Shown here: positions 3,300-32,177 of the stretch, one piece after another
Position numbering within the stretch: the stretch's first letter is position 1
Layout of the letters: each line of letters opens with the position of its first letter
IMG/VR virus record: IMGVR_UViG_3300041402_000314
Span: 62,001-126,000 of that record
Length of the DNA stretch: 64,000 nucleotides
Reading direction: 5' to 3' (one strand)
Translations under genes and position numbers: made by a program
The notes under the pieces: model-generated
Seen by the model: the letters and a program-made list of their open reading frames with translations, nothing else
Databases searched by the model: none
What the model was told of the DNA's origin: nothing

Positions 3300-3328
3300 T
3301 TGACATTTAAAAATTAACTTGATATGAT
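3300..3328 (+). promoter_or_regulatory. Sigma70-type promoter for rtcB
   Basis: TTGACA-N17-TATGAT. Confidence 0.7.
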
Positions 3329-3356
3329 TACCACCATAAACCAAAGGAGAAATAAA

Positions 3357-4499
3357 GTGAAAAATTATAAGTTGTTTATACCTGAAGAAAATATAGACCC
3401 GAAGGCATTACATCAGTTTCATGAGGCTATGGAGCAAGAGTGTATAGTTCAAGGAGCATTAATGCCAGATGTTCATGCTGGTTACTCTCTTCCTATTGGT
3501 GGAGTTGTAGCTTCTAAAGGCTTTATATTTCCTTGTTTTGTGGGATATGATATTGGTTGTGGAGTTGCTGGTGTCAAATTACCTATTAAGAAGGGCGATG
3601 TTGAAGCTCTCGGACAAGCGATATACGATGAGATACTTGATACAATCCCAATTGGATTTAAGCATAATGAGAAATGGTCTAAATGGGACTATTCTAATAT
3701 TCCAATAACTGAAGTTATGACTAATATTTTCCATGAGAAAGGAGGTTTGAAGCAACTTTGTTCTATGGGCGGAAATAACCATTTCATCGAACTAGGATAT
3801 GATGAAAATGATGATGTGTGGGCTACTACTCATACTGGAAGTCGTGGTGTTGGTCATGCTCTCGCTACTCATTACATGAGAATAGCTGGTGGTGGTAAAG
3901 CTAGAGAAGGTTGTTTTTCATTGGATGTCGAGTCTCAGGATGGTAAGGACTATATTACAGACTTGAATTTCTGTCTGGAATTTGCTTTGGAGAATAGAAA
4001 GCAGATAATTCAGAGAGTAATAAATGCTGTTGAAAAGGTACTTTCTACTAAGTTTAAGCCCTTCAATTTGAACGATGAGAAGGTGTTTATAAACAGAAAC
4101 CATAACCATGCGGAACTCAAGGATGGTCTATGGATTCATAGAAAGGGTGCTACCCATGCTGAAAAGGGAATGAGAGGTATCATTCCGGGTAATAGAAGAG
4201 ACGGTCTATTTGTAGTTGAAGGACTCGGTAATCCTGATAGCCTATATTCTAGCTCTCATGGAGCTGGTAGAATCAAAGGCAGAAAACAGGCTAGACAGGA
4301 CTTGAATCTCGATGATTATATTTCAACTATGAAAGGTATTGTAGGTGAGGTATCGGATGCTACCCTAGAGGAAGCTCCTGAAGCGTATAAGAATATCTTT
4401 GAGGTCATGGAGATGCAGAAGGAATTAGTAACAGTGAAGCATCATGTGAAGCCTCTCATTAACGTGAAAGCTTGTAAACCTATAAAGAATAAGAAATAA
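3357..4499 (+). CDS. rtcB: RtcB-family RNA ligase
   Basis: MPDVHAGY..PIG, VGYDIGCG, GGNNHFIE, HTGSRG, HNHA, HRKGAT, SHGAGR, EAPEAYK; GTG start after AAGGAG. Confidence 0.95.
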   Translation: MKNYKLFIPEENIDPKALHQFHEAMEQECIVQGALMPDVHAGYSLPIGGVVASKGFIFPCFVGYDIGCGVAGVKLPIKKGDVEALGQAIYDEILDTIPIGFKHNEKWSKWDYSNIPITEVMTNIFHEKGGLKQLCSMGGNNHFIELGYDENDDVWATTHTGSRGVGHALATHYMRIAGGGKAREGCFSLDVESQDGKDYITDLNFCLEFALENRKQIIQRVINAVEKVLSTKFKPFNLNDEKVFINRNHNHAELKDGLWIHRKGATHAEKGMRGIIPGNRRDGLFVVEGLGNPDSLYSSSHGAGRIKGRKQARQDLNLDDYISTMKGIVGEVSDATLEEAPEAYKNIFEVMEMQKELVTVKHHVKPLINVKACKPIKNKK

Positions 4500-4527
4500 G
4501 AGACTAATTTTAAAGAACAATCTATCG

Positions 4528-4622: not shown

Positions 4623-5030
4623 ATGTATAAAGTAACGCAATATTTATATAGAAAACAGTTTCATGATCGAATGTCTATCGGTAAAATGGTATCGTCAATT
4701 GGTATTATAGTAGGATTTATATCACAGCATTATAACACAACTATTTTACTGGTTGTGGTGTTAGGATTATTGGTCGATTTACTATTGAATAGGAGTGTAG
4801 ATTGGGATGGATACCCTGAAGATACCACATGTCCTATCTGTAGGGATGGTGAGTTGAATGAAAATAGAGACAAAAAAATGTTCCATTATAAAGGACATGA
4901 ATTGAGACTTCCTGATTATGAAAGATTGATGTGTGATAATTGTGGCGGTGGCCTGATGAAAATAGAGTATCAGGAAGAGGTAAATGAGAAGATAGAAGAA
5001 TTTAAACAGAAAGTTGATGATGGAGAATAG
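4623..5030 (+). CDS. Membrane-anchored YgiT/MqsA-type zinc-finger protein
   Basis: Hydrophobic N-terminal segments, then CPIC-x-G...YKGH.L.L....CDNCG. Confidence 0.65.
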   Translation: MYKVTQYLYRKQFHDRMSIGKMVSSIGIIVGFISQHYNTTILLVVVLGLLVDLLLNRSVDWDGYPEDTTCPICRDGELNENRDKKMFHYKGHELRLPDYERLMCDNCGGGLMKIEYQEEVNEKIEEFKQKVDDGE

Positions 5031-7331: not shown

Positions 7332-8651
7332 ATGGAAAGAGTAAAGAAAATATGTGAAGAAGTTAAGAGAGCTGGCGGAAGAGCTTTTCTGGTTGGTGGA
7401 ATAGTTCGGGATAAATTCCTCGGTCTGGAATCCAAGGATATCGATCTTGAAGTTTTTGGTATAGAGCCTGAAGCACTTAAGACTATAATAGAGAAGTTCG
7501 GTAAGGTTAAAGAATGCGGAAAATCTTTTGGTGTTCTTAAGCTGGATGATCTCGATATATCACTACCTAGAAGAGAGAGAAAGACTGGTGTAGGTCATAA
7601 AGGATTCGAGACAGAATGCGACCCTCATATGAGCATAGAGGAAGCATGTAGTCGAAGAGATTTGACTATAAATGCTATGCTTTTTGACCCTCTGACAGAT
7701 GAGCTACTAGACCCTTTTAATGGTCTTAATGATATAGAGGATAGAGTTTTGAGGCACGTAGATGATATACGGTTCGCTGAAGACCCTCTTAGAGTTCTCA
7801 GGGTAGCTCAGTTTCATGCCAGATTCGATTTTAGAGTACATGACGATACTAATGAGCTTTGCCGTGTTCTTCTCGATGAGCTAAAACATCTTTCTAAGGA
7901 AAGGTTTTTCATAGAGTTCGAGAAGATGCTTATGAAAGCTAATATGCCGTCTAAAGCATTCGAATGGATGCTTGAGTTTGGTGTTCTCGATGAGCTGTTC
8001 CCAGAACTAGCGGTTCTCGAAACTATAGAGCAGGGCAGGAAATGGCATCCTGAAGGTAATGTATTTACACATACCATGCTTGCTCTTGATTCGGTTTCTA
8101 AAGAGGAAAGAACCATGACCTTGATGCTTGCTATACTTTGTCATGATCTTGGTAAGGCGGTCACTGGCGGAGTTCCTAAAGAAGATGACCCTGAGAGTAT
8201 AAGTTTTCATGGTCATGCTGAAGAGGGCGTTGCTGTTACCGATAAGTTTCTCAGGAAGCTAACTGATAACAATAAGCTGATAGAAGATGTCTGTACGCTC
8301 GTAGAATTCCATATGAGGCCACTTGAGTTGAAGGCTAACCCTAAGAAGAGGCTTGTAAGAAGACTGGCTCTCAAGGTCGATATACCGCTTCTAATGAAGC
8401 TGAATGAGGCTGATATGAGGGGTGGTCTTAGAACTCCAGAAGGTATAGATGAGATATTGGCTATATTCGAAGAGATAAAGAACGAAATACATCCTCTTGT
8501 AGAAGGTAGACATCTTATAGAATTGGGCTTGACACCTTCGCGTGAATTTGGTATAATATTGTCTGAGATATTCGAAGCACAATTGGATGGTGAATTCTCA
8601 ACTCTTGAAGATGGTCTGGAATTTACTAAAACTTTTATAGCGAAGAGATGA
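7332..8651 (+). CDS. cca: tRNA nucleotidyltransferase (CCA-adding/poly(A) polymerase family) with HD domain
   Basis: LVGGIVRD, KDIDLE, RRDLTINA, EDPLRVLR, HPEG.VFTH, CHDLGK, HGHAEEG. Confidence 0.92.
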   Translation: MERVKKICEEVKRAGGRAFLVGGIVRDKFLGLESKDIDLEVFGIEPEALKTIIEKFGKVKECGKSFGVLKLDDLDISLPRRERKTGVGHKGFETECDPHMSIEEACSRRDLTINAMLFDPLTDELLDPFNGLNDIEDRVLRHVDDIRFAEDPLRVLRVAQFHARFDFRVHDDTNELCRVLLDELKHLSKERFFIEFEKMLMKANMPSKAFEWMLEFGVLDELFPELAVLETIEQGRKWHPEGNVFTHTMLALDSVSKEERTMTLMLAILCHDLGKAVTGGVPKEDDPESISFHGHAEEGVAVTDKFLRKLTDNNKLIEDVCTLVEFHMRPLELKANPKKRLVRRLALKVDIPLLMKLNEADMRGGLRTPEGIDEILAIFEEIKNEIHPLVEGRHLIELGLTPSREFGIILSEIFEAQLDGEFSTLEDGLEFTKTFIAKR

Positions 8652-20863: not shown

Positions 20864-20893
20864 ATGTTAATTAAAAAGTTGAGGAGAACAACT

Positions 20894-22735
20894 ATGAATA
20901 CTGAAAGGATCGAAGAACTAGAAAGAGAAATAGAAAAACACAATCATTTATATTGGGAGAAAAATGAACCTATCATAAATGATGAAAGTTATGATGTATT
21001 ACTCCAAGAGCTACTGACAATATACCCAGATAGTCATATCTTCACTACCTTAGAGGAACAGAAATCTATCGAACCCCAAAATAAGTATGTACATTCAGAC
21101 CCTATGCTGTCCCTTGAGAAATTCTATAGCGTAAAAGAAGTCATTACATGGATGAAGAAGATAGGTAGATCACCCCACGAACTCTTCAAAATGGAACTCA
21201 AACTCGATGGTATTTCTGGTCGCCTAGAGAATGGTAATCTTGCGACTAGGGGAGATGGTCGAGTCGGTGAGAATCATACATCTAAAATTCCTTTCATAGA
21301 ATTCAAGGTAGCTTCAGATAAAACAATCTGTGAAACTGTTGATTGTACTATCAATGGTGAGATCATTATAACGGATAAGTTCTTTGAAGATAATCTTAAG
21401 GGAGAATTCAAGAATTCGAGAAATGCTGTTGCTGGTCTGATGGGTAGAAAGCGTCCTGAAGAGATCGAAGGAATGGGAGTTACTTTCGTTGATTTTGATT
21501 ATGATAAAATCCAACATACAGGAAATGTCGATGCCTTTGAAATCGGATGGGATGATCTGGTAAAAAATCTTACTTCAAAGGGATTTCCTTTTGATGGTAT
21601 CGTAATCAAATTGGCTGATACTGACTACTACAAGCTGTTGGGCAATAAAACCAAAAGTCCTAGAGGTGCTATAGCGTTTAAGTTCGCTAATAAGAAGGGA
21701 ATTACCCCTGCTACAGAGATTACAGCCCAAGTAAGTAGGAAGGGTAAGCTTACTCCTGTTGCCGAACTAGAGCCTATTGAGTTGGCTGGTGTTACGATAT
21801 CCAGAGCTACGTGTCATAATTTTAAGTTCGTTAAGGACATGGGCATAGGAAAAGGTTCTGTTGTTGTAATTGAAAGAGCAGGAGATGTGATACCAAAAAT
21901 CACGAGCGTTGTCAAAGGTAAAATTGATGATGTTATATTCCCAACAAATTGTCCCTGTTGTGACACACCAACTGAATTTAATGGTGTAGACCTATGTTGC
22001 CCTAACACTACATGCCCAGACCGTCTGATAGAGCATCTGGCTTTCATGGCTAAAACCATTGGTATCGATGAGCTTGGCAGACCGACTGCCGAGAAAATAT
22101 ATAATTATTATGTGGAATCCACTCATAATAAAACAAATATTTTTAGATTAAATTCCATATCATATGAAGATATTCTTTCTTTAGAAGGGTATGGTGAGAA
22201 GAGTGCTAAGACACTTTATGGTAATATCCAGAACGCATTGAAAAATATCAATGAAATAGATTTTTTGGCTTCTTTTGGTATATCTGGATGGGGTAAGACT
22301 ATGGCAGACAAAGCCCTTACCAAAGCTGGTAGCCTAGATAATCTTCTCAAAATGAATAAAGAAGAATTGACTTCTATTGAAGGAATCGGAGAAATAATGG
22401 CCGAAAATCTAATAAATGGCGTTAAAGAACAATGTATACGATTAGTTCATGCTGATTATACTACCTTCATTGTCGAACCTACCAAAGAACACAATAACAT
22501 AGTAGATGGACAACACGAAAACATAGTAAAGTATACAATCTGTTTCACTGGTAAATTAGAAAATCCGAGGAAATTCTATGAAAATATTGCTAAAGAAAGA
22601 GGGATGAAACCTACTTCTTCTGTAAATAAAGACTTGAACATATTGATTACTGCTGATAAGAACAGCGTATCCAGTAAAATGAAAAAAGCTGAAAAATTAG
22701 GTATAGAGATTTTATCTTTAGAGGAATGGCTATAA
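20894..22735 (+). CDS. ligA: NAD-dependent DNA ligase
   Basis: HNHLY...D..YD, PMLSLEK, KLDG, TRGDGRVGE, RNAVAG, DGIVIK, AIAFKF, RAGDVIP, Zn finger, HhH, BRCT. Confidence 0.96.
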   Translation: MNTERIEELEREIEKHNHLYWEKNEPIINDESYDVLLQELLTIYPDSHIFTTLEEQKSIEPQNKYVHSDPMLSLEKFYSVKEVITWMKKIGRSPHELFKMELKLDGISGRLENGNLATRGDGRVGENHTSKIPFIEFKVASDKTICETVDCTINGEIIITDKFFEDNLKGEFKNSRNAVAGLMGRKRPEEIEGMGVTFVDFDYDKIQHTGNVDAFEIGWDDLVKNLTSKGFPFDGIVIKLADTDYYKLLGNKTKSPRGAIAFKFANKKGITPATEITAQVSRKGKLTPVAELEPIELAGVTISRATCHNFKFVKDMGIGKGSVVVIERAGDVIPKITSVVKGKIDDVIFPTNCPCCDTPTEFNGVDLCCPNTTCPDRLIEHLAFMAKTIGIDELGRPTAEKIYNYYVESTHNKTNIFRLNSISYEDILSLEGYGEKSAKTLYGNIQNALKNINEIDFLASFGISGWGKTMADKALTKAGSLDNLLKMNKEELTSIEGIGEIMAENLINGVKEQCIRLVHADYTTFIVEPTKEHNNIVDGQHENIVKYTICFTGKLENPRKFYENIAKERGMKPTSSVNKDLNILITADKNSVSSKMKKAEKLGIEILSLEEWL

Positions 22736-23164
22736 TGAACCCATTTTTAGTTGGTTATATCGGTATGATTGGTTTCTTCTTGTCTCATGCAGTGGCTAGA
22801 GCTGCTTATGATTGTGGAAAAGAACAGCAATATGAAATGCCTTTTATTCCACAATACCACCAGAATCCATCTGGGATGATTGAATCTGAAATGAGAATGG
22901 AAACATACGTAGCAGAACAACATATTCCAATGAATATGGTAATGATGGCATCTTCTGAAGATATGAGAAATCAAATGATAGATGCTGTTAAAAGAGATTT
23001 GGAATATACTATTTTTGATGGTTTAAAATCATATATTAAAATCGAAGAAATGTATTATCGTGATAAAGAAGACCCACCTTTCCCTTGTAAAACATTTCGA
23101 GCAAGTATAAGGGTAGCTAAAGATGAATATTAATAAAAAAACTAAAAGAGGAGATAAAAAAAGT

Positions 23165-23416
23165 ATGATTGATAAGGAAAAGTTTCAACAGTTGGCGGAT
23201 GCGATAGAACAGTTAGAAAGTGAGAAGAAGGAGCTGGCGGAAGAAGTAAAAGATAAGATCGCTATGGCAGCTCAAGAGGGTAATGCTGATAAGAAAGCTC
23301 TCGCCAAGGCGGTAAAAGAGTATCTTCGTTATAAAAAGGACACTCAGACTTACATCGCGGAGGACCTTGAAGTCTCGAATATCCTCGTATCGGTCATCAA
23401 GGAATTCCAAGACTAA
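23165..23416 (+). CDS. DsbA/GapR (DUF2312)-like dsDNA-binding protein
   Basis: IEQLESEKKELAEEVKD...A...G.DKKAL...VK. Confidence 0.7.
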   Translation: MIDKEKFQQLADAIEQLESEKKELAEEVKDKIAMAAQEGNADKKALAKAVKEYLRYKKDTQTYIAEDLEVSNILVSVIKEFQD

Positions 23417-23440
23417 AATACAATTGAATAGATCGAATAG

Positions 23441-23466
23441 AGAGGGAGCCGTTTGGCTCCTTTTTT
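23441..23466 (+). terminator. Intrinsic terminator
   Basis: GGAGCC-GTTT-GGCTCC followed by a T run. Confidence 0.8.
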
Positions 23467-24079
23467 ATTGTCGTTTTTCCTTGACATTCATATTTACCTG
23501 TGATAAGCTGTACTCATAATCAATTGAAACACTAAAAGGAGACTGAAAATGAAAGTTATTTTTGACCCAAAAGATATGGAAAATGTAAGAGACCTCATTA
23601 GTGATAGGGCAAGGGTTAAGCTTAATGATGAACAGCTCAAAGAATTCATATTCAATAAGCTTTCTAGTCATACGATAGGTGATATAGTAGCTTGCGATGG
23701 ATATTGTGGCGATACGGTAACTCGTGAATATGTTATGGACGACTTCGTAAAATCTCTTCTCGGTAAATCCGAAACGTGGCCTATAAATGGTGATGGAGAA
23801 GAGATTTTCCAAATCTTTGTTAAGAAGTTAGATGAAGCGATGAAGAAGAAAGGATATGAGCCAAAAGAATAGGGAGATCGTCATGAAAAGGAAAGTAGTA
23901 TTACAGCCAATAACTGTTCCTGCTGGTGATTATTGTTGGGAATTTAAAGTTATGGGTAGTTGTCAATATTTCAATAATGAAGGCGGACATTCAAAATGTG
24001 AATTAGGATTTTACCCATTAAAAGATAGTGGGGTTGGGGTCATAAAAGCTAATGAATGTTTTCATTTAAAAGAAAGTTC

Positions 24080-24108
24080 TTGACAAACGAATCGAAATTT
24101 AGTATAAT
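24080..24108 (+). promoter_or_regulatory. Sigma70-type promoter
   Basis: TTGACA-N17-TATAAT. Confidence 0.8.
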
Positions 24109-24678
24109 GTTGATATTAAATAATAAAGGAGAGTTTATTATGTACGCTGAAAATGAAGAATGTATCGAAGCGTTGGATAAGCTATTAGAAGAAGAAAAGT
24201 TAGCCGTACTATTTGATGAAGCGGTTAATCTCGATTTAAGAAATAAGATAGCGAATATTCTTTTTAATGCTGGAGTTAAACCAACGTATTCTCATGGTAT
24301 CTGCGGAAGCTCAACATGCGGATATGGTATGTTGGATGAGTATGGATATTGGCAATTTCCAGTATCAAAACAATTATTTGAGGAGAAATAAAAATGAAAT
24401 TTACGACAGAATTGAACGATAATAAAGCGAAAAGCAGTGAAGGTCGCTGGCGGAAATGTTGCGGAACTCATGCTAAAGGTCTCAATACAATAGAAAATGA
24501 TAATGCGCCAACGACATATCAGATTTATTGTAAGGAGTGTAATACTACTACCGCACCATATGAGACAACCCAAGAAGCGAGTTATGCTTGGAATAATAAA
24601 ATTCTGATGTAACGAATATGCTTGACAAATAAAATCAGTTTTGATACAATGTATTTGTAAGTGAGAAAAGGAGATGGA

Positions 24679-25245
24679 ATGAGAAACAACGAAATTATTA
24701 AAAAGGCTATTGAGTTTGCTAGGAAATTCCATGAAGGTCAACCATATTCGGATGTTTATGGCTATATAAGGCATCTTGAAATGGTCTATGATGTTCTGGT
24801 TAGGTTTGGCTTCAGGGAAGTAGTTATACTGGCCTCTTCTTGGTTACATGATATTATAGAAGATACTATAGTTTCTTATCAGACTGTTAAAATAGAATTT
24901 GGATTTGATATTGCTGAAGCGGTCTATGGTGTTACTGATGAACTTGGTAGGAACAGGAAAGAGAGGAAAGCTAAGACCTATCCTAAGATAAGGGCGAATA
25001 TAAACTCTCTTATACTCAAGTTGGCTGATCGGATAGCTAATGTAGAGTTCGGTGCTAGTGGTGTATTCGGAGACCCATCTAAAACAAAGATGTATCGGAA
25101 GGAGCAAGCTGAGTTCGAGGAAGCATTAGGATTTAATGAACTATCTGAGAAATTCAGTAAAGGTGCTTATGATAGTGAGGAAGAAAAAGAAGTGGATAAA
25201 AAGATTTTAGCAATGTGGTTACATTTGAGAGAACTACTAAAATAA
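24679..25245 (+). CDS. Stand-alone RelA/SpoT-type HD hydrolase (small alarmone hydrolase-like)
   Basis: FA..FHEGQ.Y...YIRHL..V, WLHDIIEDT, VTD, KLADRIAN; promoter TTGACA 24622 / TACAAT 24645. Confidence 0.85.
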   Translation: MRNNEIIKKAIEFARKFHEGQPYSDVYGYIRHLEMVYDVLVRFGFREVVILASSWLHDIIEDTIVSYQTVKIEFGFDIAEAVYGVTDELGRNRKERKAKTYPKIRANINSLILKLADRIANVEFGASGVFGDPSKTKMYRKEQAEFEEALGFNELSEKFSKGAYDSEEEKEVDKKILAMWLHLRELLK

Positions 25246-25529
25246 TAAAGGAGAGGAGAATAAAATGAAATTGATTGAAAAGGCTGGTATGAGTTTTGGT
25301 ATATTGGGTGTGTTGGTAGTGGTAGGTTTAATACTATCACTGGCAGGGTTGTCTTTTTACGGTATATACCTAGCATTTAGCGCAAGTATCATTCTTGGTA
25401 TTATTGCGCTGTTCGTTCAACCATCACCATTTGTATTTGGTGTATGTATGGTTTTCGGAAAGAACATACCTGAAATAATTCAGGCATGGGCTGACTTTCC
25501 TATCTAAAAGTTAAAACTGGAGGTGTACT

Positions 25530-25814
25530 ATGAGTCAACAAAGAAAGTGTAACCATTGTGGTGTAAGGTTTAGAAAGAGTCATAGATGTAGTGTAGTAAA
25601 TAGGACTATTGATGACAGTTGTATCGAGGATTTCATTTTGGTTGCTGTTGTACTAGATTCTCTCATGTCTGAGGATTCTTGCGAAAGCTCATCTTATGAC
25701 AGCGGTGGAAGCTCATCTTATGACAGCGGAAGCTCATCATATGATGGTGGAAGTAGCTCATCTTATGACAGCGGAAGCAGCGATTCTGGCGGTGGCGATT
25801 GCGGTGGCGATTAA
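25530..25814 (+). CDS. Small Zn-finger protein with Ser/Gly/Asp low-complexity tail
   Basis: CNHC...HRC; tail encoded by four AGCTCATC(T/A)TATGA repeats (SSSYD). Confidence 0.7.
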   Translation: MSQQRKCNHCGVRFRKSHRCSVVNRTIDDSCIEDFILVAVVLDSLMSEDSCESSSYDSGGSSSYDSGSSSYDGGSSSSYDSGSSDSGGGDCGGD

Positions 25815-25857
25815 TACCCTTAGACTGAAAGAAAACAATTAAAACTGGAGGTGTATT

Positions 25858-26655
25858 ATGAATAGAAGAGTTGAACTACTACTGATCGACCCACAGAATG
25901 ATTTCTGTGATAAAAATGGGAGTCTGTTTGTACCCGGAGCTGATGAAGATTCTCTCCGACTGGCAACCATGATCGAGAGGATAAAGAATAAAATTTATAA
26001 TATCCATGTTACCCTCGATACCCACCACTATCTGGATATAGCTCATCCGATGTTCTGGACGAACTCAGAGGGCAGTCATCCACAACCATTTACGCTAATA
26101 TCCAAGCAGGATATCGCTGATGGGACATGGAGAACTACCAATCCTGCGGAACAGGATTACGGTAAGCAGTATATCGAAACTCTTGAAGCAAACAATCGTT
26201 ATCTGCTTTGTATCTGGCCTCCGCACTGCCTAATCGGTACATGGGGTCATAATGTGGTAGAACCTGTTGCAAATGCCGTTATGGAATGGGAAAAACGCTA
26301 TAGGTTCGTAGATTACGTTACAAAGGGTAGTAACTATAAGACTGAACATTATAGTGCTGTTCAGGCCGAAGTACCTGACCCTGAAGACCCATCTACACTG
26401 ATCAATACACCGTTTATCGAGACGCTTGAAGAAGCAGATATAATCGGTATATCTGGACAAGCTCTTAGCCATTGTGTAGCGAATACGGTAACGGATATCG
26501 CTGATCAATTCGGTGACGATAATATCAAGAAGCTTGTGCTGCTTGAGGATACCACATCTCCAGTACCTACTTTCGAGGGTCTTGGAGAAGATTTCCTCAA
26601 GGATATGAAGGCGAGAGGTATGCAGGTAGCGAGGTCAACAGACTTTTTAGCATAA
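25858..26655 (+). CDS. pncA: Nicotinamidase/isochorismatase-family hydrolase
   Basis: IDPQNDFC, L.VPGA, DTH, H, WPPHC, KG, SHCV. Confidence 0.85.
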   Translation: MNRRVELLLIDPQNDFCDKNGSLFVPGADEDSLRLATMIERIKNKIYNIHVTLDTHHYLDIAHPMFWTNSEGSHPQPFTLISKQDIADGTWRTTNPAEQDYGKQYIETLEANNRYLLCIWPPHCLIGTWGHNVVEPVANAVMEWEKRYRFVDYVTKGSNYKTEHYSAVQAEVPDPEDPSTLINTPFIETLEEADIIGISGQALSHCVANTVTDIADQFGDDNIKKLVLLEDTTSPVPTFEGLGEDFLKDMKARGMQVARSTDFLA

Positions 26656-26664
26656 ACAGTTTAT

Positions 26665-26781
26665 GGGAGAGTGGCGAAATTGGTAAACGCATCCTTATTA
26701 GGTCTGATACTCTTGCTGATAAGTTAGGACTGAACAGGATGGTGAGCAAGCACTTTGTAGGTTCGATTCCTACCTCTCCCA
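26665..26781 (+). tRNA. tRNA-Leu(UAG)-like gene with ~31-nt insertion in the anticodon loop; CCA not encoded
   Basis: Acceptor GGGAGAG/CTCTCCC + A73; Leu-type D arm GGCGAAATTGGTAAACGC; long variable arm; T arm GTAGG-TTCGATT-CCTAC; ATCCT/AGGAT encloses 40 nt. Confidence 0.7.
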
Positions 26782-26796
26782 ACATAATTTAAGTTT

Positions 26797-26902
26797 GGTA
26801 GGTAGGGCGATAATCGGAGAAAACTCTTTAATGATATTCGCCCCTGATTGAAGGTTTGAGAGTGAGCGGTTTAAATGACCTATCCGATTGCCCTACACTA
26901 TC
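26797..26902 (+). ncRNA. Putative ~105-nt structured RNA downstream of the tRNA
   Basis: Closing stem GGTAG-GTAGGGC-AATCGGA / TCCGATT-GCCCTAC-CTATC; GC-richer than surroundings; no ORF. Confidence 0.5.
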
Positions 26903-26943
26903 GATTAAAAAGAATAAAATAAAAGAATAGAGGAGGTAATAAA

Positions 26944-27321
26944 GTGAAAAGATTAATTAGTATAGTAATATTGTTGTTTTTATGTGTAGGATGTACCGAT
27001 GCTGACGTTGCATCAAGGAATTTGGCTAAGTCTGCTGACATGTTTGAGTTAGAGCGTAGGATAGTTTTTTATGATGCCATCCAAGGTGTCTATCTGCTGT
27101 CAATAGAGGGAAGATGTTCAATAGAAGTTAGGACAGCAAAGCTATCAGTGACATGTAAAACAAGTGAGACTGGTTATAAGAAGCACCATCTTGGATTATC
27201 GGATAATGTCACCTTCTTTTCGGAGCAGTTAAAATCGGCAAATGTTGGCGTTTACAATTATCGAGTAATTTTTAAGCCTGAAGTTTTAATCCCGAATATA
27301 GACTTAGAAACAAGCAGATAA
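26944..27321 (+). CDS. Conserved phage lipoprotein
   Basis: Lipobox CVGC after a signal peptide; ADVASRNL..SADMFE.RRIVFY...EGRCS...YKKH.LGLSDNVT. Confidence 0.8.
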   Translation: MKRLISIVILLFLCVGCTDADVASRNLAKSADMFELERRIVFYDAIQGVYLLSIEGRCSIEVRTAKLSVTCKTSETGYKKHHLGLSDNVTFFSEQLKSANVGVYNYRVIFKPEVLIPNIDLETSR

Positions 27322-27363
27322 CTTACGACCCTTAATAAAATAAAAGAATAATGGAGGTGTATC

Positions 27364-28092
27364 ATGAATGAAGACATGGATTTTAACATACCAATAGTCG
27401 GTGGTGGAGCATTTAATTTCTCTGCTACTAAGCCTGAGGTTTTAGGTGCGACAGAATATACGATTGTAACTCTTGTTGTGGACATATCAGGAAGTGTAAT
27501 ACCGTTTTCGAATGAACTGCTTGAGACAGTAAAGAGTGTAGTCACCGCCTGTCAAAAGAGTCCGAGAGCAGAAAATTTACTTTTCAGATTAATATCGTTT
27601 AATGATACTGTGATGGAGGTTCATGGATTTGTTCAATTGAATGGAATCAAAGCGGATGATTATCAAGCCCTCCAGTGTGGCGGAAGAACTGCTTTGTTTG
27701 ATGCGGTTCATGAGGCCATAGGCGCAACAATTTCGTATGGTCAAAGATTGATCGATCAAGATTTTGACGCGAACGCAATTGTATTCGTAGTTACTGACGG
27801 GCTAGATTGGGGTTCTACTATGACACCAAGAACTATCAAAGACCTTGTTGATAAGGCGGTGATCGGGGAACAATTGGAAAGTCTGACCACAATTCTTGTT
27901 GGTGTAAACGCAGATGATTGTGAGGATGCATTGGAGAGGTTTGTGAAGGAAGCTAACCTTTCACAATTCATAAACATAGGAGATGTGACACCACAGAAAT
28001 TGGCTAAATTGGCTCAGTTTGTTTCGAAGTCAATTTCATCAACATCACAGTCTCTCGGCACTGGCGGAGCAAGTCAGCAACTAATCTTTTAA
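27364..28092 (+). CDS. vWA (TerY-like) domain protein
   Basis: MIDAS DISGS, GGRTALFDA, VVTDG, ILVGV. Confidence 0.88.
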   Translation: MNEDMDFNIPIVGGGAFNFSATKPEVLGATEYTIVTLVVDISGSVIPFSNELLETVKSVVTACQKSPRAENLLFRLISFNDTVMEVHGFVQLNGIKADDYQALQCGGRTALFDAVHEAIGATISYGQRLIDQDFDANAIVFVVTDGLDWGSTMTPRTIKDLVDKAVIGEQLESLTTILVGVNADDCEDALERFVKEANLSQFINIGDVTPQKLAKLAQFVSKSISSTSQSLGTGGASQQLIF

Positions 28093-28102
28093 TCTTCCAT
28101 TC

Positions 28103-28135
28103 AAAAATGGGAGGGCTTCGGCTCTCCCATTTTTT
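28103..28135 (+). terminator. Intrinsic (possibly bidirectional) terminator
   Basis: AAAAATGGGAGGGC-TTCG-GCTCTCCCATTTTT. Confidence 0.85.
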
Positions 28136-28137
28136 CC

Positions 28138-28166
28138 TTGACTTCCTATCTTCCTTTTGTTATAAT
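28138..28166 (+). promoter_or_regulatory. Sigma70-type promoter for the pncB-like operon
   Basis: TTGACT-N17-TATAAT. Confidence 0.75.
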
Positions 28167-28197
28167 GTGTTCATAATCTAATAAAGGAGATAAACCA

Positions 28198-29604
28198 ATG
28201 AAAGAATTTTTACTTTTAAAAAATGACTATTATCAGTTAAGCATGTGTGTGGCCTATATTTTATTAGACCAAGCAAATCAAAAAGCAGGGTTCGAGGGTT
28301 TTGTCCGTAGAATCAATTCCAAAATCAATCCAGACCAAGATTTATATTACTTCGGTGGTAATAAAGAGGCTAACGAGCTTCTGGAAACTGCTAAAACCGA
28401 GATTCAAGACCCTGAATTTCTGGAGACCTTTATATCATTAGTCGAGACTAAACTTCCTGAAGATAAGAGAGACCTCTATATACGTCTCATAAGAGATAAA
28501 TGGGAATATCTGGATAAGGATTTTCATTATACTGTCTATCCTGAGAACGCCAAATTGTTTCCATATGTTCCTGCTGTACAATTCTATGGCGCAAAATGGA
28601 TAGGTCAACTTCTGGAAACTCCATTAATAAATACAATCAATGGTAAAACTGGTTTCAATACTTTAGATCGTCTGGATGGTTTTGATAGTGAAGAAGAGAA
28701 AGATTATTTAAAAACTATCATGGGCGGAAATTTCCAGAATAATAATTCATACTTCAATACGTATAGACAAGAATTATCTATACGAGCTAAAGAATATAGA
28801 GATTCTACCAGCAAGATGTTATTTGAAGCTGGTTATAGACGAGCATGTGGATTTGATGCTTCTTGGTTAGCTACTCAAATAGCTTTAACTGAAGGATGGG
28901 ATGGTACTAGCAATACCTCCATCATGTTCGACAATCGTACATGGACAGATTATACTACTGAAGAAAAGCGACTCGTTAAGATAGGTGGAACCATAGCACA
29001 TAGTTTTATAATGAGCCATCCGACTCAATTAGAAGCCCTCTTCAATTGGAATTTAATATATCCAAATAGCACCATATTATCATGTACTTATGATGTCATG
29101 GAATGTTTGGAACTGATGATAAAATATAACATCAAACCAGCAATGGTTCGTATTGATGTGAATCCATTGGCTGATTTAGCTAGACAGGTTAGGGATAGGT
29201 TAGATTCTGTCGGGTGGTCTGATGTTAAAATATTCCTATCTGGTGACTTAACTCCAGAGAAATTGAGAAAATTTGAAGAAGATGGAGTACCCTTCGATGC
29301 ATGTATGGCGGGAACCTCTTATGTTAACGTAGGCGGAACTGATAAGGTCAATGCTGAATTTGTCTATAAGCTGGTTGAATTCGAGAAGGATGGGAAGACT
29401 TTTTATCCTGAGAAGAAAGCCAATGGGAAGGATAGTAAGGCTGGATTGAAATATGTAGAATATAGTAAATATAGAAAGACTTTAGATGTGACCTCCCATA
29501 AAACAGAAAATGTTATGGATTTTGAAATAAAAAAGACATGGATGGGTTTTTGGGGTCTTACTGAAAATAACGAAATAGAAGAAGTGAGGTTTATAAATGA
29601 TTAA
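28198..29604 (+). CDS. pncB: Nicotinate phosphoribosyltransferase-like (divergent PncB)
   Basis: LLKNDYYQLSM, QLLET..IN, FEAGYRRA, GTSN, GTIAHSFI, TYD, VRID, SGDL, VYKLVE. Confidence 0.8.
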   Translation: MKEFLLLKNDYYQLSMCVAYILLDQANQKAGFEGFVRRINSKINPDQDLYYFGGNKEANELLETAKTEIQDPEFLETFISLVETKLPEDKRDLYIRLIRDKWEYLDKDFHYTVYPENAKLFPYVPAVQFYGAKWIGQLLETPLINTINGKTGFNTLDRLDGFDSEEEKDYLKTIMGGNFQNNNSYFNTYRQELSIRAKEYRDSTSKMLFEAGYRRACGFDASWLATQIALTEGWDGTSNTSIMFDNRTWTDYTTEEKRLVKIGGTIAHSFIMSHPTQLEALFNWNLIYPNSTILSCTYDVMECLELMIKYNIKPAMVRIDVNPLADLARQVRDRLDSVGWSDVKIFLSGDLTPEKLRKFEEDGVPFDACMAGTSYVNVGGTDKVNAEFVYKLVEFEKDGKTFYPEKKANGKDSKAGLKYVEYSKYRKTLDVTSHKTENVMDFEIKKTWMGFWGLTENNEIEEVRFIND

Positions 29605-30445
29605 AAATATCGATAGTTTTATGACCATAGGCAATTCCCATGAGGTATGTGAAGATTATATCTATTCCTCTTTCGGAGTAGACCCTTATATTATTCTGTC
29701 AGATGGTTGTTCCAGTTCCAATAATACTGATGTGGGAGCAAGGGTTCTAGTTCACTCAGCAAGGAACATATTGAATCGGTTCATATATAAAACTGGTATG
29801 CCTATTAATGCCGATACAATGGGTGATATGATAGCAAATGAAGCAGATGAGACAATCAAGAAAATGGGATTGAATACTTCGGCTCTGGATGCTACTCTAA
29901 TCATAGCATATCGACTCAAAAATAAGATCGTAATCAATGTCTTCGGTGATGGTAATGTCATATTAAAGAAGAAAGACGGAACCACGAAAATATATAATTA
30001 CCAGTATGCCAATAATATGCCTTATTATCTATCTTACTATGTCGATGCTGGAAGGCAGAACCAATATTGTAGGGAGATGTTCGATGTTGATGAAGGCGGT
30101 AAGACCATGACCACAAATCTTCTTCGTCTTAATAATGACCCTGCCTTGAGGGATTATCATGAATATTCTCATGAAGATTTTGTTAAGATACCCACTTTCG
30201 TTCTTCCTATCGAAGAATATGCAATGATAGGTATAGCATCTGATGGAATAGAGTCTTTCGGTAATCCTGTTAGTGGCCTTAGAAAAGACCATTATGTTGT
30301 ATTGGAGGAGCTAACAGCCTTTAAAGGGACTGTTGGAGAGTTCCTTAAGAGAAGGTGCAAGAGAGCTATCAAGAACTATAAGAAAGAAGGGATAGAGCAT
30401 TATGATGATGTGTCTATCGGAGTAATGTTGATAGGAGATGAATGA
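29597..30445 (+). CDS. PP2C-like protein phosphatase
   Basis: GNSHEVCEDY, SDGCSS, ATL, GDG, SDGI, DDVS. Confidence 0.85.
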   Translation: MIKNIDSFMTIGNSHEVCEDYIYSSFGVDPYIILSDGCSSSNNTDVGARVLVHSARNILNRFIYKTGMPINADTMGDMIANEADETIKKMGLNTSALDATLIIAYRLKNKIVINVFGDGNVILKKKDGTTKIYNYQYANNMPYYLSYYVDAGRQNQYCREMFDVDEGGKTMTTNLLRLNNDPALRDYHEYSHEDFVKIPTFVLPIEEYAMIGIASDGIESFGNPVSGLRKDHYVVLEELTAFKGTVGEFLKRRCKRAIKNYKKEGIEHYDDVSIGVMLIGDE

Positions 30446-30614
30446 TGGATATACCAATAACTGATATATTTAAAAAGATTAGTTCTAAAGACAAACGTTT
30501 AGAAATATATTATGATATAGCATCTGAGAGAGTTATAATTAGACATGATAATGCTGCATGGAACTATCCTACCTTTGAAGAGGCTATTGCTGGATTAATA
30601 GGGAGTTATATTAA

Positions 30615-31136
30615 ATGAAAATAATATTTCTTGATATAGACGGTGTTCTGAACCACCAACGATTTTACAAAGAGAGGTTTGAAGCCAGAAAGCAAGATAA
30701 ATTGGATGGTAATCTCGTCAAAAAGTCTCAGATTGATCGTGAAGCAGAAGAGATAGACCCTGAATCTGTCGAAAATTTGAATGAACTTATTGAGAATACT
30801 GGAGCTAAAGTTGTTATTAGTTCTACATGGAGATTGGGTACAGAGATCGAAACACTTCAAGCCATTCTCGAAAAACGAGGATTTGTTGGAGAGGTTATAG
30901 GTAAAACCCCTGTAGGTTGTGGTTGTTGTCAAAGAGGAAATGAAATTCATAAATGGTTAGGTGATAATCGCGATATCATAGATGAAGAAGGTAATAATTA
31001 TATAATTCTCGATGATGATAGTGATATGCTCTACTGGCAACGAAATAATTTTATAAACGTAGATCAATATGTTGGATTAACACCTAAACAGGTTTATAAA
31101 GCTACGAGATTTTTAACAGGTATAGGTCAATTGTGA
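30615..31136 (+). CDS. HAD phosphatase (Swiss-army-knife RNA-repair type)
   Basis: IFLDIDGVLN, VISSTWR, RGNEI..WL, YIILDDDSDM, GLT. Confidence 0.85.
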   Translation: MKIIFLDIDGVLNHQRFYKERFEARKQDKLDGNLVKKSQIDREAEEIDPESVENLNELIENTGAKVVISSTWRLGTEIETLQAILEKRGFVGEVIGKTPVGCGCCQRGNEIHKWLGDNRDIIDEEGNNYIILDDDSDMLYWQRNNFINVDQYVGLTPKQVYKATRFLTGIGQL

Positions 31137-31558
31137 AAGAGAATAAATTTAGGGTATGGGATACTTTTACTAAAAAGATGGTCTTTGAAGGATTTAATGT
31201 CATAGGAGAAGTAACATGCTTTAATGGTATTGAACAATATGGAGATGAACATCCTAATCCTGCATATGAATCATCATTGATGCGACTTAATGATTTCATT
31301 CTCATGCAATTTACTGGTCTTGCGGATAAAAACGGTAAAGACTTATATGAAAATGACTTGGTAATACACAAACATGATTTATCCGTATATCAGGTGATCT
31401 GGGTAGATGAAGAAGCTAAATTCATACTCAATTTAGTAAAGGGAAATGGTAATGATAGTATTGATGAAGATTTAAGTCCGTTGAATCTATCGCTATTTAC
31501 GATTATAGGAAATATATATGAGAAACCTGAATGGTTGGAGATAGAAAATGAAAGGTAG
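31133..31558 (+). CDS. YopX-family protein
   Basis: KFRVWD, MQFTGLADKNGKDLYENDLV, IIGNIYE.PE. Confidence 0.9.
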   Translation: MKENKFRVWDTFTKKMVFEGFNVIGEVTCFNGIEQYGDEHPNPAYESSLMRLNDFILMQFTGLADKNGKDLYENDLVIHKHDLSVYQVIWVDEEAKFILNLVKGNGNDSIDEDLSPLNLSLFTIIGNIYEKPEWLEIENER

Positions 31559-32177
31559 AATTTATAAAATACCACTATTGGAAAGGTTCACCTCTGTTAA
31601 TAGAGCATGTTTTACTTTTAGTCGTTGTAGGCCGATGACCGTAGATTCAATAGGTCTTTATGTGTATTATGATGATGAAAAGGATATTACAGTTAGTAAT
31701 GTTCGTCAGTCGCTAATAGGCGTTAAAGATACTCGTGTTATAGTAGTGGCGAAAAATGTAAATGAAGCTCTCGATAAATTTTATGATGAGTGGGATGGTG
31801 CTAAAGTAGGCGGTGATTTCATAGATTCTAAGGCACTATGGGTCAATCCTAATAGAAATATAGTTGAATATCCTAGCTGTAGTCTGTTAAACATAAACAG
31901 TAAAGATGAGCGTATTTGTGGGAAAGAAATAACGATGGGTGAAGACGAATATGCTCATAATTGTGGCGAATTTGGTTGGTGTACTTTAGATGGATATGAT
32001 AGCGATATGGATTGTCCTGTAGAAGCATGTAGTGGGTTTAATTATGAACTTAAACCCACGATAAAGACATGTAATCATAAAACAGGTATTTTTAAATATG
32101 AGTCATGTGATATGTTTTTAGATTGGAGTAAGAAATTTTTTAGCTCTACAGAAAACGTAAATTTAGAGGACTGAAAA

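What the first reader, a model, noticed from the sequence alone, without database searches (positions are those of the whole stretch)
26665..26781. tRNA-Leu(UAG)-like gene with a 31-nt insert at position 37/38, in a genome encoding RtcB and a CCA-adding enzyme
Seen: acceptor, D, variable and T arms are intact and Leu-type, but the anticodon stem encloses 40 nt. Counting from the D arm gives TAG at 34-36 (26699-26701) and G37. Removing 26703-26733 restores a 7-nt loop, though with an atypical A32 and a T31/C39 mismatch. The insert can pair with the anticodon (TTAG/CTGA, or CTTATTAG/CTGATAAG) and mask it. No CCA is encoded. Known: 37/38 is the canonical archaeal/eukaryotic intron site, and RtcB joins such exons. 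Inference: either a protein-spliced phage tRNA intron, or a non-decoding tRNA mimic or decoy with a shielded anticodon. No splicing endonuclease is recognisable in this window, and I see no clean bulge-helix-bulge.
Basis: partly seen in the sequence, partly recalled or inferred. Interest (0 to 1): 0.75.

Follow-up and report, generated by a model that had tools for sequence, protein, structure and literature searches.

The report
Leucine tRNA mimic with extended arm
A 204-kb phage from marine-sediment bacteria carries a selectively conserved leucine-tRNA look-alike whose anticodon arm is lengthened by about 31 bases; it is more likely a non-decoding tRNA mimic in a fast-changing small-RNA locus than a tRNA with a protein-spliced intron.

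Summary
Window 26665-26781 (+) is a tRNA-shaped gene (Rfam tRNA, 44 bits). It has a Leu-type D arm, a long variable arm, A73, no encoded CCA, and 40 nt enclosed by the anticodon stem.

The intron reading is not supported:
- There is no bulge-helix-bulge and no splicing endonuclease in the phage, and the host is bacterial.
- The spliced product would have A32, a U31/C39 mismatch and no CCA. That is unlike the phage's 28 ordinary tRNAs, which already include tRNA-Leu(UAG).

It is also not decaying. An ortholog in another assembly (L212) differs at 8 of 117 positions, against 21% at fourfold-degenerate sites of the adjacent gene. All four changes in paired columns keep the pairs, one by a compensatory double change. 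The insert changed at 2 of 31 positions.

The gene sits in a hypervariable slot between a nicotinamidase-like gene and a conserved structured leader RNA. Close relatives have an empty slot or 140-211-nt tRNA-shelled RNAs there. Intact Leu-type tRNA shells with non-anticodon middles were also found in other uncultured-phage contigs.

Best reading: a functional, unspliced tRNA mimic, processed like a tRNA. Its role is unknown; a decoy role is a guess.

The parts
26665..26781 (+). tRNA-Leu-derived tRNA-like gene (117 nt): acceptor, D arm, extended anticodon arm, long variable arm, T arm and A73. No CCA is encoded.
   Evidence: Rfam RF00005 at 44 bits. Ortholog L212 scores 39.7 bits. All 30 pairs hold in both orthologs.
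26692..26739 (+). Extended anticodon arm. Basal stem TCCT/AGGA (26692-95 / 26736-39) encloses 40 nt that fold into an imperfect rod.
   Evidence: Folds (arm alone -14 kcal/mol, z = -2.1). The register G38-C66..Y41-G63 is kept in L212.
26699..26702 (+). UAG at tRNA positions 34-36, followed by G37. This is the relic of a Leu(UAG) anticodon loop.
   Evidence: Counted from the D arm. Homologs at the same locus keep G-U-AAG-G-U (L194) or C-G-UAG-A-A (L213) at this place.
26703..26733 (+). It has no other copy in the genome.
   Evidence: no second copy. 2 of 31 positions differ in L212, against 21% at neutral sites. It aligns in register with fragments of two other tRNA-like genes in runs X7 and X2.
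26698..26707 (+). First copy of the direct repeat TTAGGnCTGA.
   Evidence: Read. The 26-nt spacing of GnCTGA recurs in the X7 fragment.
26724..26733 (+). Second copy of the direct repeat TTAGGnCTGA. Its CTGAAC end is the most conserved part across family members.
   Evidence: CTGAAC is also present in the type E element L213.
26658..26662 (+). Left copy of the AGTTT direct repeat that bounds the 134-nt presence/absence segment.
   Evidence: Contigs in runs X2 and X5 join 26657 to 26792, with 5 letters fitting either side. Analogous repeats, up to 9 nt, flank the elements in L191 and L192.
26792..26796 (+). Right copy of the AGTTT direct repeat.
26794..26906 (+). Conserved structured leader RNA just downstream. 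It forms the 3' border of the variable slot and ends at the Shine-Dalgarno sequence of the next gene.
   Evidence: RNAalifold gives 34 pairs, 10 with compensatory changes in 5 sequences. 6% diverged against 21% at neutral sites. No Rfam match.
25858..26655 (+). Nicotinamidase/isochorismatase-like gene. It forms the 5' border of the slot and served as the anchor for fetching relatives and as the neutral-rate yardstick.
3324..4499 (+). RtcB RNA ligase. It is in the same genome but 22 kb away.
   Evidence: Pfam RtcB at 257 bits.
7332..8651 (+). CCA-adding enzyme with an HD domain. It could supply the missing CCA.

Best explanation
The locus is a functional small-RNA gene derived from a tRNA-Leu(UAG).

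Shown:
- It keeps a complete tRNA shell: acceptor stem, D/T elbow, long variable arm and A73.
- Its anticodon arm has been lengthened into a roughly 48-nt imperfect rod.
- Shell and rod are both kept by purifying selection.
- It belongs to a homologous set of tRNA-shelled RNAs with a hypervariable middle. These occupy one slot between a nicotinamidase-like gene and a conserved leader RNA in a clade of marine-sediment phages.

Inferred from established enzymology:
- It lies inside a co-directional gene array with no predicted promoter just upstream (nearest about 220 nt away, inside the pncA-like gene) and no predicted terminator. It is therefore probably cut out of the polycistronic transcript by RNase P and a 3' nuclease.
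- It then receives CCA from the phage or host CCA-adding enzyme.
- It could even be charged by LeuRS, which does not read the anticodon.
- With a rod in place of a 7-nt anticodon loop it cannot decode on the ribosome. It is not spliced.

Speculative: it acts in trans as a mimic, sponge or decoy for a tRNA-binding factor in the phage-host conflict over tRNA. That would explain the rapid turnover of the middle domain among close relatives. Its excision also splits the operon mRNA at that point.
For: Shell and chance: Rfam gives 44 bits here and 39.7 bits in ortholog L212.

Selection:
- 8 of 117 differences between the orthologs, against 23 of 109 at fourfold sites of the adjacent gene. Binomial P = 2e-5 for the whole gene, 3e-4 for the shell, 0.027 for the insert.
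- The four changes in paired columns all keep pairing: C11-G25 to U-A, A6-U to G.U, and U41.G63 to C-G.
- The other four fall at D-loop 16, position 44, T-loop 59 and the apical region.

Insert is a family trait:
- Fragments of two further tRNA-like genes with different acceptor stems (runs X7 and X2) align in register with it.
- They share the 5' AgGnCUrA and 3' CUGAAC motifs.
- They show three double compensatory changes in a 4-bp apical helix between them (read by eye).

Not decoding:
- As encoded there is no 7-nt loop.
- A canonical tRNA-Leu(UAG) with CCA sits in the 28-gene tRNA cluster on the other strand, about 62 kb away.
- The product of any excision is atypical.

Hypervariable slot:
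- Empty in L190 and in contigs of runs X2 and X5.
- 117 nt here and in L212; 140 nt in L194 and L216; 211 nt in L191; 197 nt in L192; 200 nt in L213-215.
- All occupants share the GGGr..GGCG..TGG..ACGy start and the GGTTCGAwTCC T arm.

Wider precedent: 27 of 70 unique intact Leu-type shells in IMG/VR contigs are 90-309 nt long. One shell family has middles of 20-71 nt and no anticodon loop.

Context: no predicted promoter just upstream (the nearest is about 220 nt upstream, inside the pncA-like gene) and no predicted terminator. Neighbouring genes are NAD-salvage-like, kinase and phosphatase genes.
Against: - No expression data at all; no RNA run could be listed.
- Only two full sequences of this exact type are in hand, so support for the rod rests on one informative substitution plus 30-nt fragments.
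- The selection signal for the insert alone is marginal (binomial 0.027; Fisher 0.067).
- The gene is dispensable, since close relatives lack it.
- No binding partner or target is identified. The insert has no significant complementarity elsewhere in the phage genome.
- Some slot occupants look damaged: L194 has an 8-nt T loop, and the L213 acceptor has 5 of 7 pairs. Part of the family may therefore be decaying.
- Charging by LeuRS and processing by RNase P are inferred, not tested.
Confidence: 0.45

Rival explanations
1. Intron-containing tRNA-Leu(UAG). An unidentified endonuclease, from phage or host, cuts at 26702/26703 and 26733/26734. RtcB joins the halves and the CCA-adding enzyme finishes a decoding tRNA.
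For: - The 5' half of the anticodon arm is intact through U33-UAG-G37, and a 31-nt deletion restores a 7-nt loop.
- 37/38 is the canonical archaeal/eukaryal intron site (established knowledge).
- RtcB and a CCA-adding enzyme are encoded.
- Sequence motifs at both ends of the insert are conserved across family fragments while the middle varies with covariation. That pattern would also suit a recognised intron.
Against: - No bulge-helix-bulge, no EndA, and a bacterial host.
- The two repeat copies would give symmetric cuts 26 nt apart, leaving a 14-nt loop rather than 7.
- The product has A32 (0 of 28 in this phage), a U31/C39 mismatch and no CCA, and duplicates an existing tRNA-Leu(UAG).
- The insert is as conserved as the exons.
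- Homologs L194, L191, L192 and L213 at the same slot cannot yield a tRNA.
- No report of such splicing in bacteria or phages turned up.
Confidence: 0.13
2. Purely cis-acting 'tRNA punctuation'. Only the shell matters, as an RNase P / 3'-nuclease cleavage signal that separates the nicotinamidase-like mRNA from the leader RNA and downstream genes. The excised RNA has no function of its own.
For: - It sits 9 nt after a stop codon and 12 nt before a conserved 5' leader, in a co-directional array with no terminator and no promoter just upstream.
- Across slot variants the acceptor and T arm persist while the middle is free to vary.
- RNase P needs only the acceptor/T-arm stack (established knowledge).
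Against: - The insert and variable arm of this type are conserved about threefold below the neutral rate.
- They are shared by fragments whose acceptor stems differ completely. That is the opposite of shell-only selection.
- Relatives with an empty slot manage without the signal.
Confidence: 0.17
3. Neutral remnant. A tRNA-Leu gene was disabled by an insertion, or by a degenerated mobile intron, and is now a pseudogene riding in a recombination hot spot.
For: - Presence/absence polymorphism with short flanking direct repeats.
- It is redundant with a canonical tRNA-Leu(UAG), lacks CCA, and is isolated from the tRNA cluster.
- Some slot occupants have defective T loops or acceptors.
Against: - Divergence is 6.8% against 21% at neutral sites (P = 2e-5), and every change in a paired column keeps the pair, including one compensatory double change.
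- All tertiary-core nucleotides are intact.
- The insert keeps its length and register in distinct family members.
- The 31 nt are far too short for a group I intron, and there is no Rfam intron match.
Confidence: 0.1
4. Small mobile tRNA-like cassette. The shell, a short A/T-rich trailer and a 5-9-nt duplicated target form a selfish insertion unit that repeatedly invades the site ..AGTTTGG.
For: - Filled sites are bounded by AGTTT or TCAGTTTGG repeats and empty sites carry one copy.
- Five different occupants occur among phages whose flanking protein is 76-100% identical.
Against: - The occupants share 5' and 3' sequence blocks, so they look like diverged orthologs with indels in the middle rather than independent arrivals.
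- There is no second copy of the element or of the motif context elsewhere in the genome.
- No transposase or integrase is adjacent.
Confidence: 0.07

Closest known systems
Phage T4 small stable RNAs, species 1 and 2 (rnaC, rnaD)
   Same: Both are phage-encoded stable RNAs of about 120-140 nt that are not decoding tRNAs. T4 rnaC ends in a canonical T arm (CCGGG/TTCGAAT/CCCGG) followed by an acceptor-like strand, as read. Their function is still unknown (my knowledge).
   Different: There is no sequence similarity. The T4 RNAs lie inside the tRNA cluster and carry the extra domain 5' of the tRNA-like part. Here the whole cloverleaf is kept and the extra nucleotides sit inside the anticodon arm, in an mRNA operon far from the tRNA cluster.
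Archaeal/eukaryal pre-tRNAs with a 37/38 intron (EndA/TSEN plus RtcB)
   Same: The extra nucleotides follow position 37. Part of the insert can pair with the anticodon. RtcB is encoded by the genome.
   Different: No bulge-helix-bulge, no endonuclease, a bacterial host, an atypical product, and an insert as conserved as the exons.
Bacterial and phage tRNA genes with group I introns in the anticodon loop
   Same: The interruption lies in the anticodon loop of a tRNA-Leu-type gene. A true example, L048 (tRNA-Leu(UAA) enclosing 234 nt), turned up in the same D-arm scan.
   Different: The 31 nt cannot form a group I core, and Rfam finds no intron model.
Phage anti-defence tRNAs (such as T5 tRNA-Lys against PARIS, tRNA-Tyr against retron PtuAB, and anticodon-loop variants; PMC10264068, PMC11464382, PMC11555353)
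   Same: Both are phage-encoded tRNA-derived molecules thought to answer host nucleases that target the anticodon arm. This one lies in a variable accessory locus.
   Different: The described cases are decoding tRNAs with point changes in a normal 7-nt loop. This molecule has no usable anticodon loop, and no defence link has been shown for it.
tmRNA and bacterial Y RNA (YrlA) tRNA-like domains
   Same: A tRNA-like acceptor/T-arm module is combined with a non-tRNA domain.
   Different: ARAGORN -m finds no tmRNA here or in L190-L193, and Rfam gives only a 13-bit permuted-tmRNA hit here. There is no tag reading frame. No Ro60/TROVE gene is present. YrlA has its ends in the Ro-binding stem, whereas here the ends are in the acceptor stem.

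Membership tests
tRNA (Rfam RF00005) | Cloverleaf shell that scores above the family threshold | tested here: met
   44 bits against a gathering score of 29. Ortholog L212 scores 39.7 bits.
tRNA (Rfam RF00005) | 5-bp anticodon stem closing a 7-nt loop with U33 and a readable anticodon | tested here: not met
   As encoded, the stem encloses 40 nt. Default ARAGORN rejects it.
tRNA (Rfam RF00005) | Conserved tertiary-core nucleotides (U8, A14, G18, G19, G53, T54, Psi55, C56, A58, C61) | tested here: met
   Read. None of them changed in L212.
tRNA (Rfam RF00005) | Aminoacylation and use in translation | not testable with these tools
   A73 and the Leu-type D arm suggest LeuRS could charge it, but that is inference only.
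Protein-spliced (BHB) tRNA intron | Bulge-helix-bulge (3-4-3) or a relaxed form that positions both splice sites | tested here: not met
   A script search of the whole RNA found no motif in the anticodon arm that leaves a 7-nt loop. The folds show 2x2 internal loops instead.
Protein-spliced (BHB) tRNA intron | Splicing endonuclease (EndA/Sen) available in the virus or host | tested here: not met
   PF01974 is absent from the 204-kb record at E <= 1. Host features are bacterial. The record is 89% complete, so absence from the virus is not absolute.
Protein-spliced (BHB) tRNA intron | RtcB-type ligase present | tested here: met
   Window 3324-4499, Pfam RtcB at 257 bits.
Protein-spliced (BHB) tRNA intron | Excision yields a canonical tRNA | tested here: inconclusive
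   The 7-nt loop is restored, but with A32 (0 of 28 phage tRNAs), a U31/C39 mismatch and no CCA. ARAGORN gives another solution.
Protein-spliced (BHB) tRNA intron | Spliced RNA observed | not testable with these tools
   No RNA run could be listed. The DNA contigs show only the full form or complete absence of the gene.
Group I intron in tRNA | Catalytic core P1-P9, usually 200 nt or more | tested here: not met
   The insert is 31 nt, and no Rfam intron match appears even at E <= 10.
tmRNA | tRNA-like domain plus tag reading frame and pseudoknots | tested here: not met
   The scan, which covers tmRNA as well as tRNA, found nothing in the window. The best Rfam tmRNA hit is 13 bits against 47.
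Bacterial Y RNA (YrlA) | Ro60/Rsr partner gene and a Ro-binding stem formed by the RNA ends | tested here: not met
   No TROVE domain in the genome. The ends lie in the acceptor stem.
Phage tRNA-shelled non-decoding RNAs (unnamed; T4 rnaC-like in concept) | Intact acceptor plus T arm (and D arm) with a non-anticodon middle domain of variable length | tested here: met
   True of this gene, the slot homologs L191, L192, L194 and L213, and 27 of 70 unique Leu-type shells in IMG/VR. This grouping is descriptive and not a curated family.

The most novel reading that the evidence does not exclude
The insert is a true intron of a new kind. A bacteriophage would make a tRNA-Leu(UAG) by enzymatic, non-self-splicing excision at 37/38, using an unrecognised bacterial or phage endonuclease that reads the repeated UUAGGnCUGA motif, followed by RtcB ligation. 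That would be the first protein-dependent tRNA splicing pathway in the bacterial world.

A second, less radical novel reading, which I rate at about 0.3: the locus encodes a hypervariable, tRNA-scaffolded anti-defence RNA.
Probability: 0.12. Interest if true: 0.9.

Novelty: new variant of a known kind. Interest (0 to 1): 0.6.

Why it matters
Phage tRNA genes are now seen as weapons in the conflict over host tRNA-cleaving defences, but the described cases are ordinary decoding tRNAs with point changes. This locus shows a tRNA-derived RNA that has lost its anticodon loop yet is kept by selection. It sits in a slot where close relatives carry quite different tRNA-shelled RNAs or none. In one scan of uncultured phages, about four in ten unique intact Leu-type tRNA shells had similarly non-canonical middles. 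If these RNAs are stable and active, they form an overlooked class of phage small RNAs. They would use the tRNA shell for processing, stability and perhaps charging, and a variable middle for something else. They would also give a modern handle on the 50-year-old puzzle of the T4 'species 1/2' RNAs. Practically, tRNA finders either miss such genes or report invented introns and anticodons for them.

Tried and rejected
- Close relatives in GenBank phages: none.
- Synteny through the downstream VG64-like gene (24 loci) and a 64%-identical nicotinamidase-like locus: no tRNA there.
- Pattern scans for the insert family in IMG/VR, JGI metagenomes and GTDB genomes: only chance matches.
- RNA evidence: no RNA run could be listed.
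- The AGTTTGG / ATAA..AGTTT context as a general phage promoter motif: rejected, since it occurs only at this locus.
- The insert as a repeated mobile or palindromic element, or as an antisense RNA to a phage gene: rejected, with no second copy and no significant complementarity.
- Archaeal virus with host EndA: rejected on bacterial hallmarks.
- tmRNA, Y RNA, group I intron and known ribozymes: no support.
- An anticodon loop at the apex of the rod: the apical loops of this gene and of the X7 and X2 fragments give no consistent U33/anticodon.
- TAG recoding as a reason for odd tRNAs: no signal.
- ARAGORN -i on other long Leu-type shells gives arbitrary anticodons and intron sites, so its intron calls are not evidence.
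- Literature searches found no description of short protein-spliced tRNA introns or rod-armed tRNA mimics in phages.
Full report
**Setting.** The window is bases 62001-126000 of a 204,149-bp IMG/VR virus record, 89% complete by CheckV. The DNA is found in marine-sediment and cold-seep metagenomes.

The host is a bacterium, on several counts:
- The phage encodes a sigma-70-type factor, DnaB, a DnaG-like primase and an NAD-dependent ligase.
- Its two tRNA-Tyr genes have long variable arms, and most of its tRNAs encode CCA.
- It has initiator-like tRNA-Met genes with an unpaired 1-72 and GGG/CCC in the anticodon stem.

ARAGORN finds 28 ordinary tRNA genes. Rfam finds 31 besides the odd one. All lie on the minus strand at 2.9-26.7 kb of the genome. 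They include a normal tRNA-Leu(UAG), a tRNA-Leu(UAA) and an amber-suppressor-type tRNA(CUA).

**Checking the observation.** Rfam's tRNA model matches window 26665-26781 (+) over its full length at 44 bits. It puts 46 nt where the anticodon region should have 13. Read from the sequence:
- The acceptor stem has seven Watson-Crick pairs, and position 73 is A followed by ACA.
- The D arm is the Leu type. Its exact 20-nt word occurs in dozens of canonical phage tRNA-Leu genes.
- The tertiary-core nucleotides are all present.
- The variable arm is long, and the T arm is canonical.
- TCCT/AGGA encloses 40 nt. UAG and G fall at positions 34-37.
- Deleting 26703-26733 leaves A-U-UAG-G-A with a U31/C39 mismatch.

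RtcB (3324-4499) and a CCA-adding enzyme (7332-8651) are present. The sequence is not an assembly artefact. A contig from another sample covers it with four differences, and an independent ENA assembly holds an ortholog.

**Is it an intron?** Several tests argue against it.
- A script search finds no 3-4-3 bulge-helix-bulge in the anticodon arm that would leave a 7-nt loop. The folds give two 2x2 internal loops around a 4-bp helix.
- No EndA-type domain is in the record, even at E <= 1.
- Of the ORFs around RtcB that were scanned against Pfam, the matches were a NUMOD3/zinc-finger ORF, an MqsA-like ORF, DnaB and the CCA-adding enzyme; two ORFs had no match and the small ORFs were not scanned. 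No RNA endonuclease was recognised.
- The sequence does not define the intron uniquely. ARAGORN -i reports Leu(AAG) with a 23-nt intron at 33/34 and a 27-nt variable region.
- The two copies of UUAGGnCUGA are 26 nt apart. Equivalent cuts in both copies would leave a 14-nt loop.
- All 28 ordinary tRNAs of this phage have a pyrimidine at position 32 and U33, and 26 encode CCA. It would also duplicate an existing tRNA-Leu(UAG).
- The 31 nt are far too short for a group I intron, and Rfam gives no such match.

**Is it a decaying pseudogene?** No. I used the upstream nicotinamidase-like protein to fetch relatives.
- L212:2007-2123 is a 117-nt ortholog with no gaps that also scores as a tRNA, at 39.7 bits. 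It differs at eight positions.
- Four changes lie in paired columns and all keep the pair. C11-G25 becomes U-A, a compensatory double change in the D stem. A6-U111 becomes G.U. U41.G63 becomes C-G.
- The others are at D-loop 16, position 44, T-loop 59 and the apex of the rod.
- All 30 pairs of the cloverleaf-plus-rod structure hold in both sequences.
- Between the same two phages, fourfold-degenerate sites of the adjacent gene differ at 23 of 109 positions, or 21%.
- Against that rate, 8 of 117 has a binomial probability of 2e-5. The shell alone (6 of 86) gives 3e-4 and the insert alone (2 of 31) gives 0.027.

The gene is therefore under purifying selection, and the insert is at least as conserved as the 'exons'. 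The U41C change breaks the minimum-free-energy register (U41-A62). It strengthens an alternative register (G38-C66, U39-A65, C40-G64, Y41-G63). In that register the UAG triplet lies in an internal loop rather than in a helix. So 'shielded anticodon' is not established.

**Further family members.** In the one read-laying run, contigs from runs X7 and X2 match only 26730-26764/75. That stretch covers the end of the insert, the 3' anticodon-stem strand, the variable arm and the start of the T arm. Downstream they continue with different acceptor strands.
- The 30 nt printed upstream of each match align with our insert in register.
- The start (A-g-G-n-C-U-r-A) and the CUGAAC end are conserved.
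- A 4-bp apical helix reads AGCU/AGCU in X7 and GAUU/AAUC in X2, which is three double compensatory changes.
- I read this by eye from 30-nt consensus strings, so it is suggestive only.
- It agrees with the insert being an old, maintained feature.
- Pattern scans did not recover these genes from IMG/VR, JGI metagenomes or GTDB genomes.

**The locus is a hypervariable slot.** The gene lies between the stop codon of the nicotinamidase-like gene and a conserved structured RNA (26794-26906). Relatives whose flanking protein is 76-100% identical show these states:

| Slot state | Where seen |
|---|---|
| Empty | L190; contigs of runs X2 and X5 that join 26657 to 26792 |
| 117-nt gene | this window; L212 |
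| 140-nt element with the same Leu-type D arm and G-U-AAG-G-U after the 5' anticodon-stem strand, but no 3' partner for that strand | L194; L216 (partial) |
| 211-nt element | L191 |
| 197-nt element | L192 |
| 200-nt element with a relic hairpin carrying UAG but G33, and about 125 extra nt in the variable region | L213-215 |
| 119 'other letters' (sequence not seen) | one contig of run X3 |

All occupants begin GGGr..GGCG..(TGG)..ACGy and end with a GGTTCGAwTCC T arm and an acceptor strand. I therefore read them as diverged homologs with large indels in the middle. Independent arrivals cannot be excluded, because filled sites are bounded by AGTTT(GG) direct repeats of 5-9 nt. That motif context is not a general promoter motif of the phage. 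The genome holds no other hidden tRNA shell.

**A wider pattern.** The D-arm word retrieved 70 unique IMG/VR genes with an intact 7-bp acceptor and T arm.
- About 43 are canonical-sized (52-86 nt), most of them tRNA-Leu.
- The other 27 are 90-309 nt long.
- One of these (L048) is a classic group I intron tRNA-Leu(UAA).
- Most of the rest have no recognisable anticodon loop.
- One shell (AGTCAGG/CCTGACT) occurs with middles of 20 to 71 nt, the shortest being a plain hairpin.
- ARAGORN -i assigns these arbitrary introns and anticodons.

Intact Leu-type tRNA shells with non-decoding middles therefore recur in these uncultured-phage contigs.

The closest described analogue I know is the pair of T4 small stable RNAs. 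T4 rnaC does end in a canonical T arm plus an acceptor-like strand. It shares no sequence with our gene, and its function is unknown.

**Mechanism.** Shown:
- a tRNA-shaped, selectively maintained RNA gene;
- an anticodon arm replaced by a conserved imperfect rod;
- a location inside a co-directional gene array, with no predicted promoter just upstream (nearest about 220 nt away) and no predicted terminator.

Inferred from known enzymology:
- RNase P and a 3' nuclease should excise it, since they recognise the acceptor/T-arm stack.
- A CCA-adding enzyme should complete it.
- LeuRS, which ignores the anticodon and needs A73 and the Leu-type core, might charge it.
- The ribosome cannot use it.
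- Excision necessarily cuts the operon transcript between the nicotinamidase-like gene and the leader.

Speculative: a trans-acting mimic, decoy or sponge for a tRNA-binding factor. This is suggested by the rapid turnover of the middle domain among near-identical phages, and by current knowledge that many defence nucleases attack the anticodon arm (PMC10264068, PMC11464382, PMC11555353, PMC13056530).

I give this overall reading 0.45. The rivals are cis-acting punctuation only (0.17), a spliced tRNA (0.13), a neutral remnant (0.10) and a mobile cassette (0.07). The rest is left unassigned.

**Verdict.** The new points are the evidence of selection, the hypervariable slot and the wider class of tRNA-shelled phage RNAs. 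Function remains untested because no RNA data could be found.

Noticed in passing
window 26794-26906 (+): A conserved structured RNA lies immediately 5' of the Shine-Dalgarno sequence and start of the next gene. RNAalifold gives 34 pairs, 10 with compensatory changes in 5 sequences. It is 6% diverged where neutral sites are 21% diverged. No Rfam family matches. It was found only in this phage clade, and the genes downstream of it differ between relatives (VG64-like here, a 143-aa ORF plus Band_7 in L212 and L213, VWA in L192). It is a candidate novel leader or riboswitch-like element within an NAD-salvage-like gene set.
   Followed up: partly
window 26658-26796; L190, L191, L192, L194, L212-L216: The slot between the nicotinamidase-like gene and the leader RNA is empty or holds any of at least five different tRNA-shelled RNAs (117-211 nt) in phages whose flanking protein is 76-100% identical. 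Filled sites are bounded by AGTTT(GG) direct repeats of 5-9 nt.
   Followed up: yes
IMG/VR loci L012, L015, L017, L019, L027, L058, L073, L090, L109, L125 (and other loci): One tRNA shell (acceptor AGTCAGG/CCTGACT, Leu-type D arm, canonical T arm) occurs with middle regions of 20-71 nt and no anticodon loop. Overall, 27 of 70 unique intact Leu-type shells are 90-309 nt long. This looks like an undescribed class of phage tRNA-like RNAs.
   Followed up: partly
genome 5928-6001 (-), outside the window: There is a tRNA with anticodon CUA (amber suppressor type, no encoded CCA). Reading through TAG does not improve ORF coverage more than reading through TGA, so there is no sign of TAG recoding.
   Followed up: partly
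genome 14402-14486 (-) and 17693-17779 (-), outside the window; IMG/VR L038, L062, L074, L108: A tRNA with anticodon GUU (85 nt) and one with CAU (87 nt) carry long variable arms, which is unusual for Asn and Met/Ile tRNAs. Similar GUU tRNAs with a Leu-type D arm, U1-A72 and G73 recur in other phage contigs.
   Followed up: no
IMG/VR L009, L018, L020, L054, L055, L071, L094, L113, L126: These are 74-nt tRNAs with a Leu-type D arm and a UAG or AAG-type anticodon loop, but only a 5-nt variable region. They look like tRNA-Leu without the long arm.
   Followed up: no
window 2403-5030: RtcB (3324-4499) is flanked by an ORF with zinc-finger/NUMOD3 motifs (2403-3290) and an ORF with an MqsA-antitoxin-like domain (4623-5030).
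   Followed up: no
window 20864-33860: This is a co-directional block with an NAD-dependent DNA ligase, an HD-domain protein, a nicotinamidase-like gene, a VG64-like lipoprotein, a VWA protein, a NAPRTase-like gene, a PP2C phosphatase and a Ser/Thr-kinase-like gene. It is a possible NAD-salvage and counter-defence neighbourhood.
   Followed up: no
L209 (phage T4 AF158101 70908-71046): T4 rnaC (species 1 RNA) ends in CCGGG/TTCGAAT/CCCGG plus an acceptor-like strand that can pair with CGGAACG upstream. Rfam gives only a 17.5-bit tRNA-Sec hit, so this classic tRNA-like RNA has no family model.
   Followed up: partly
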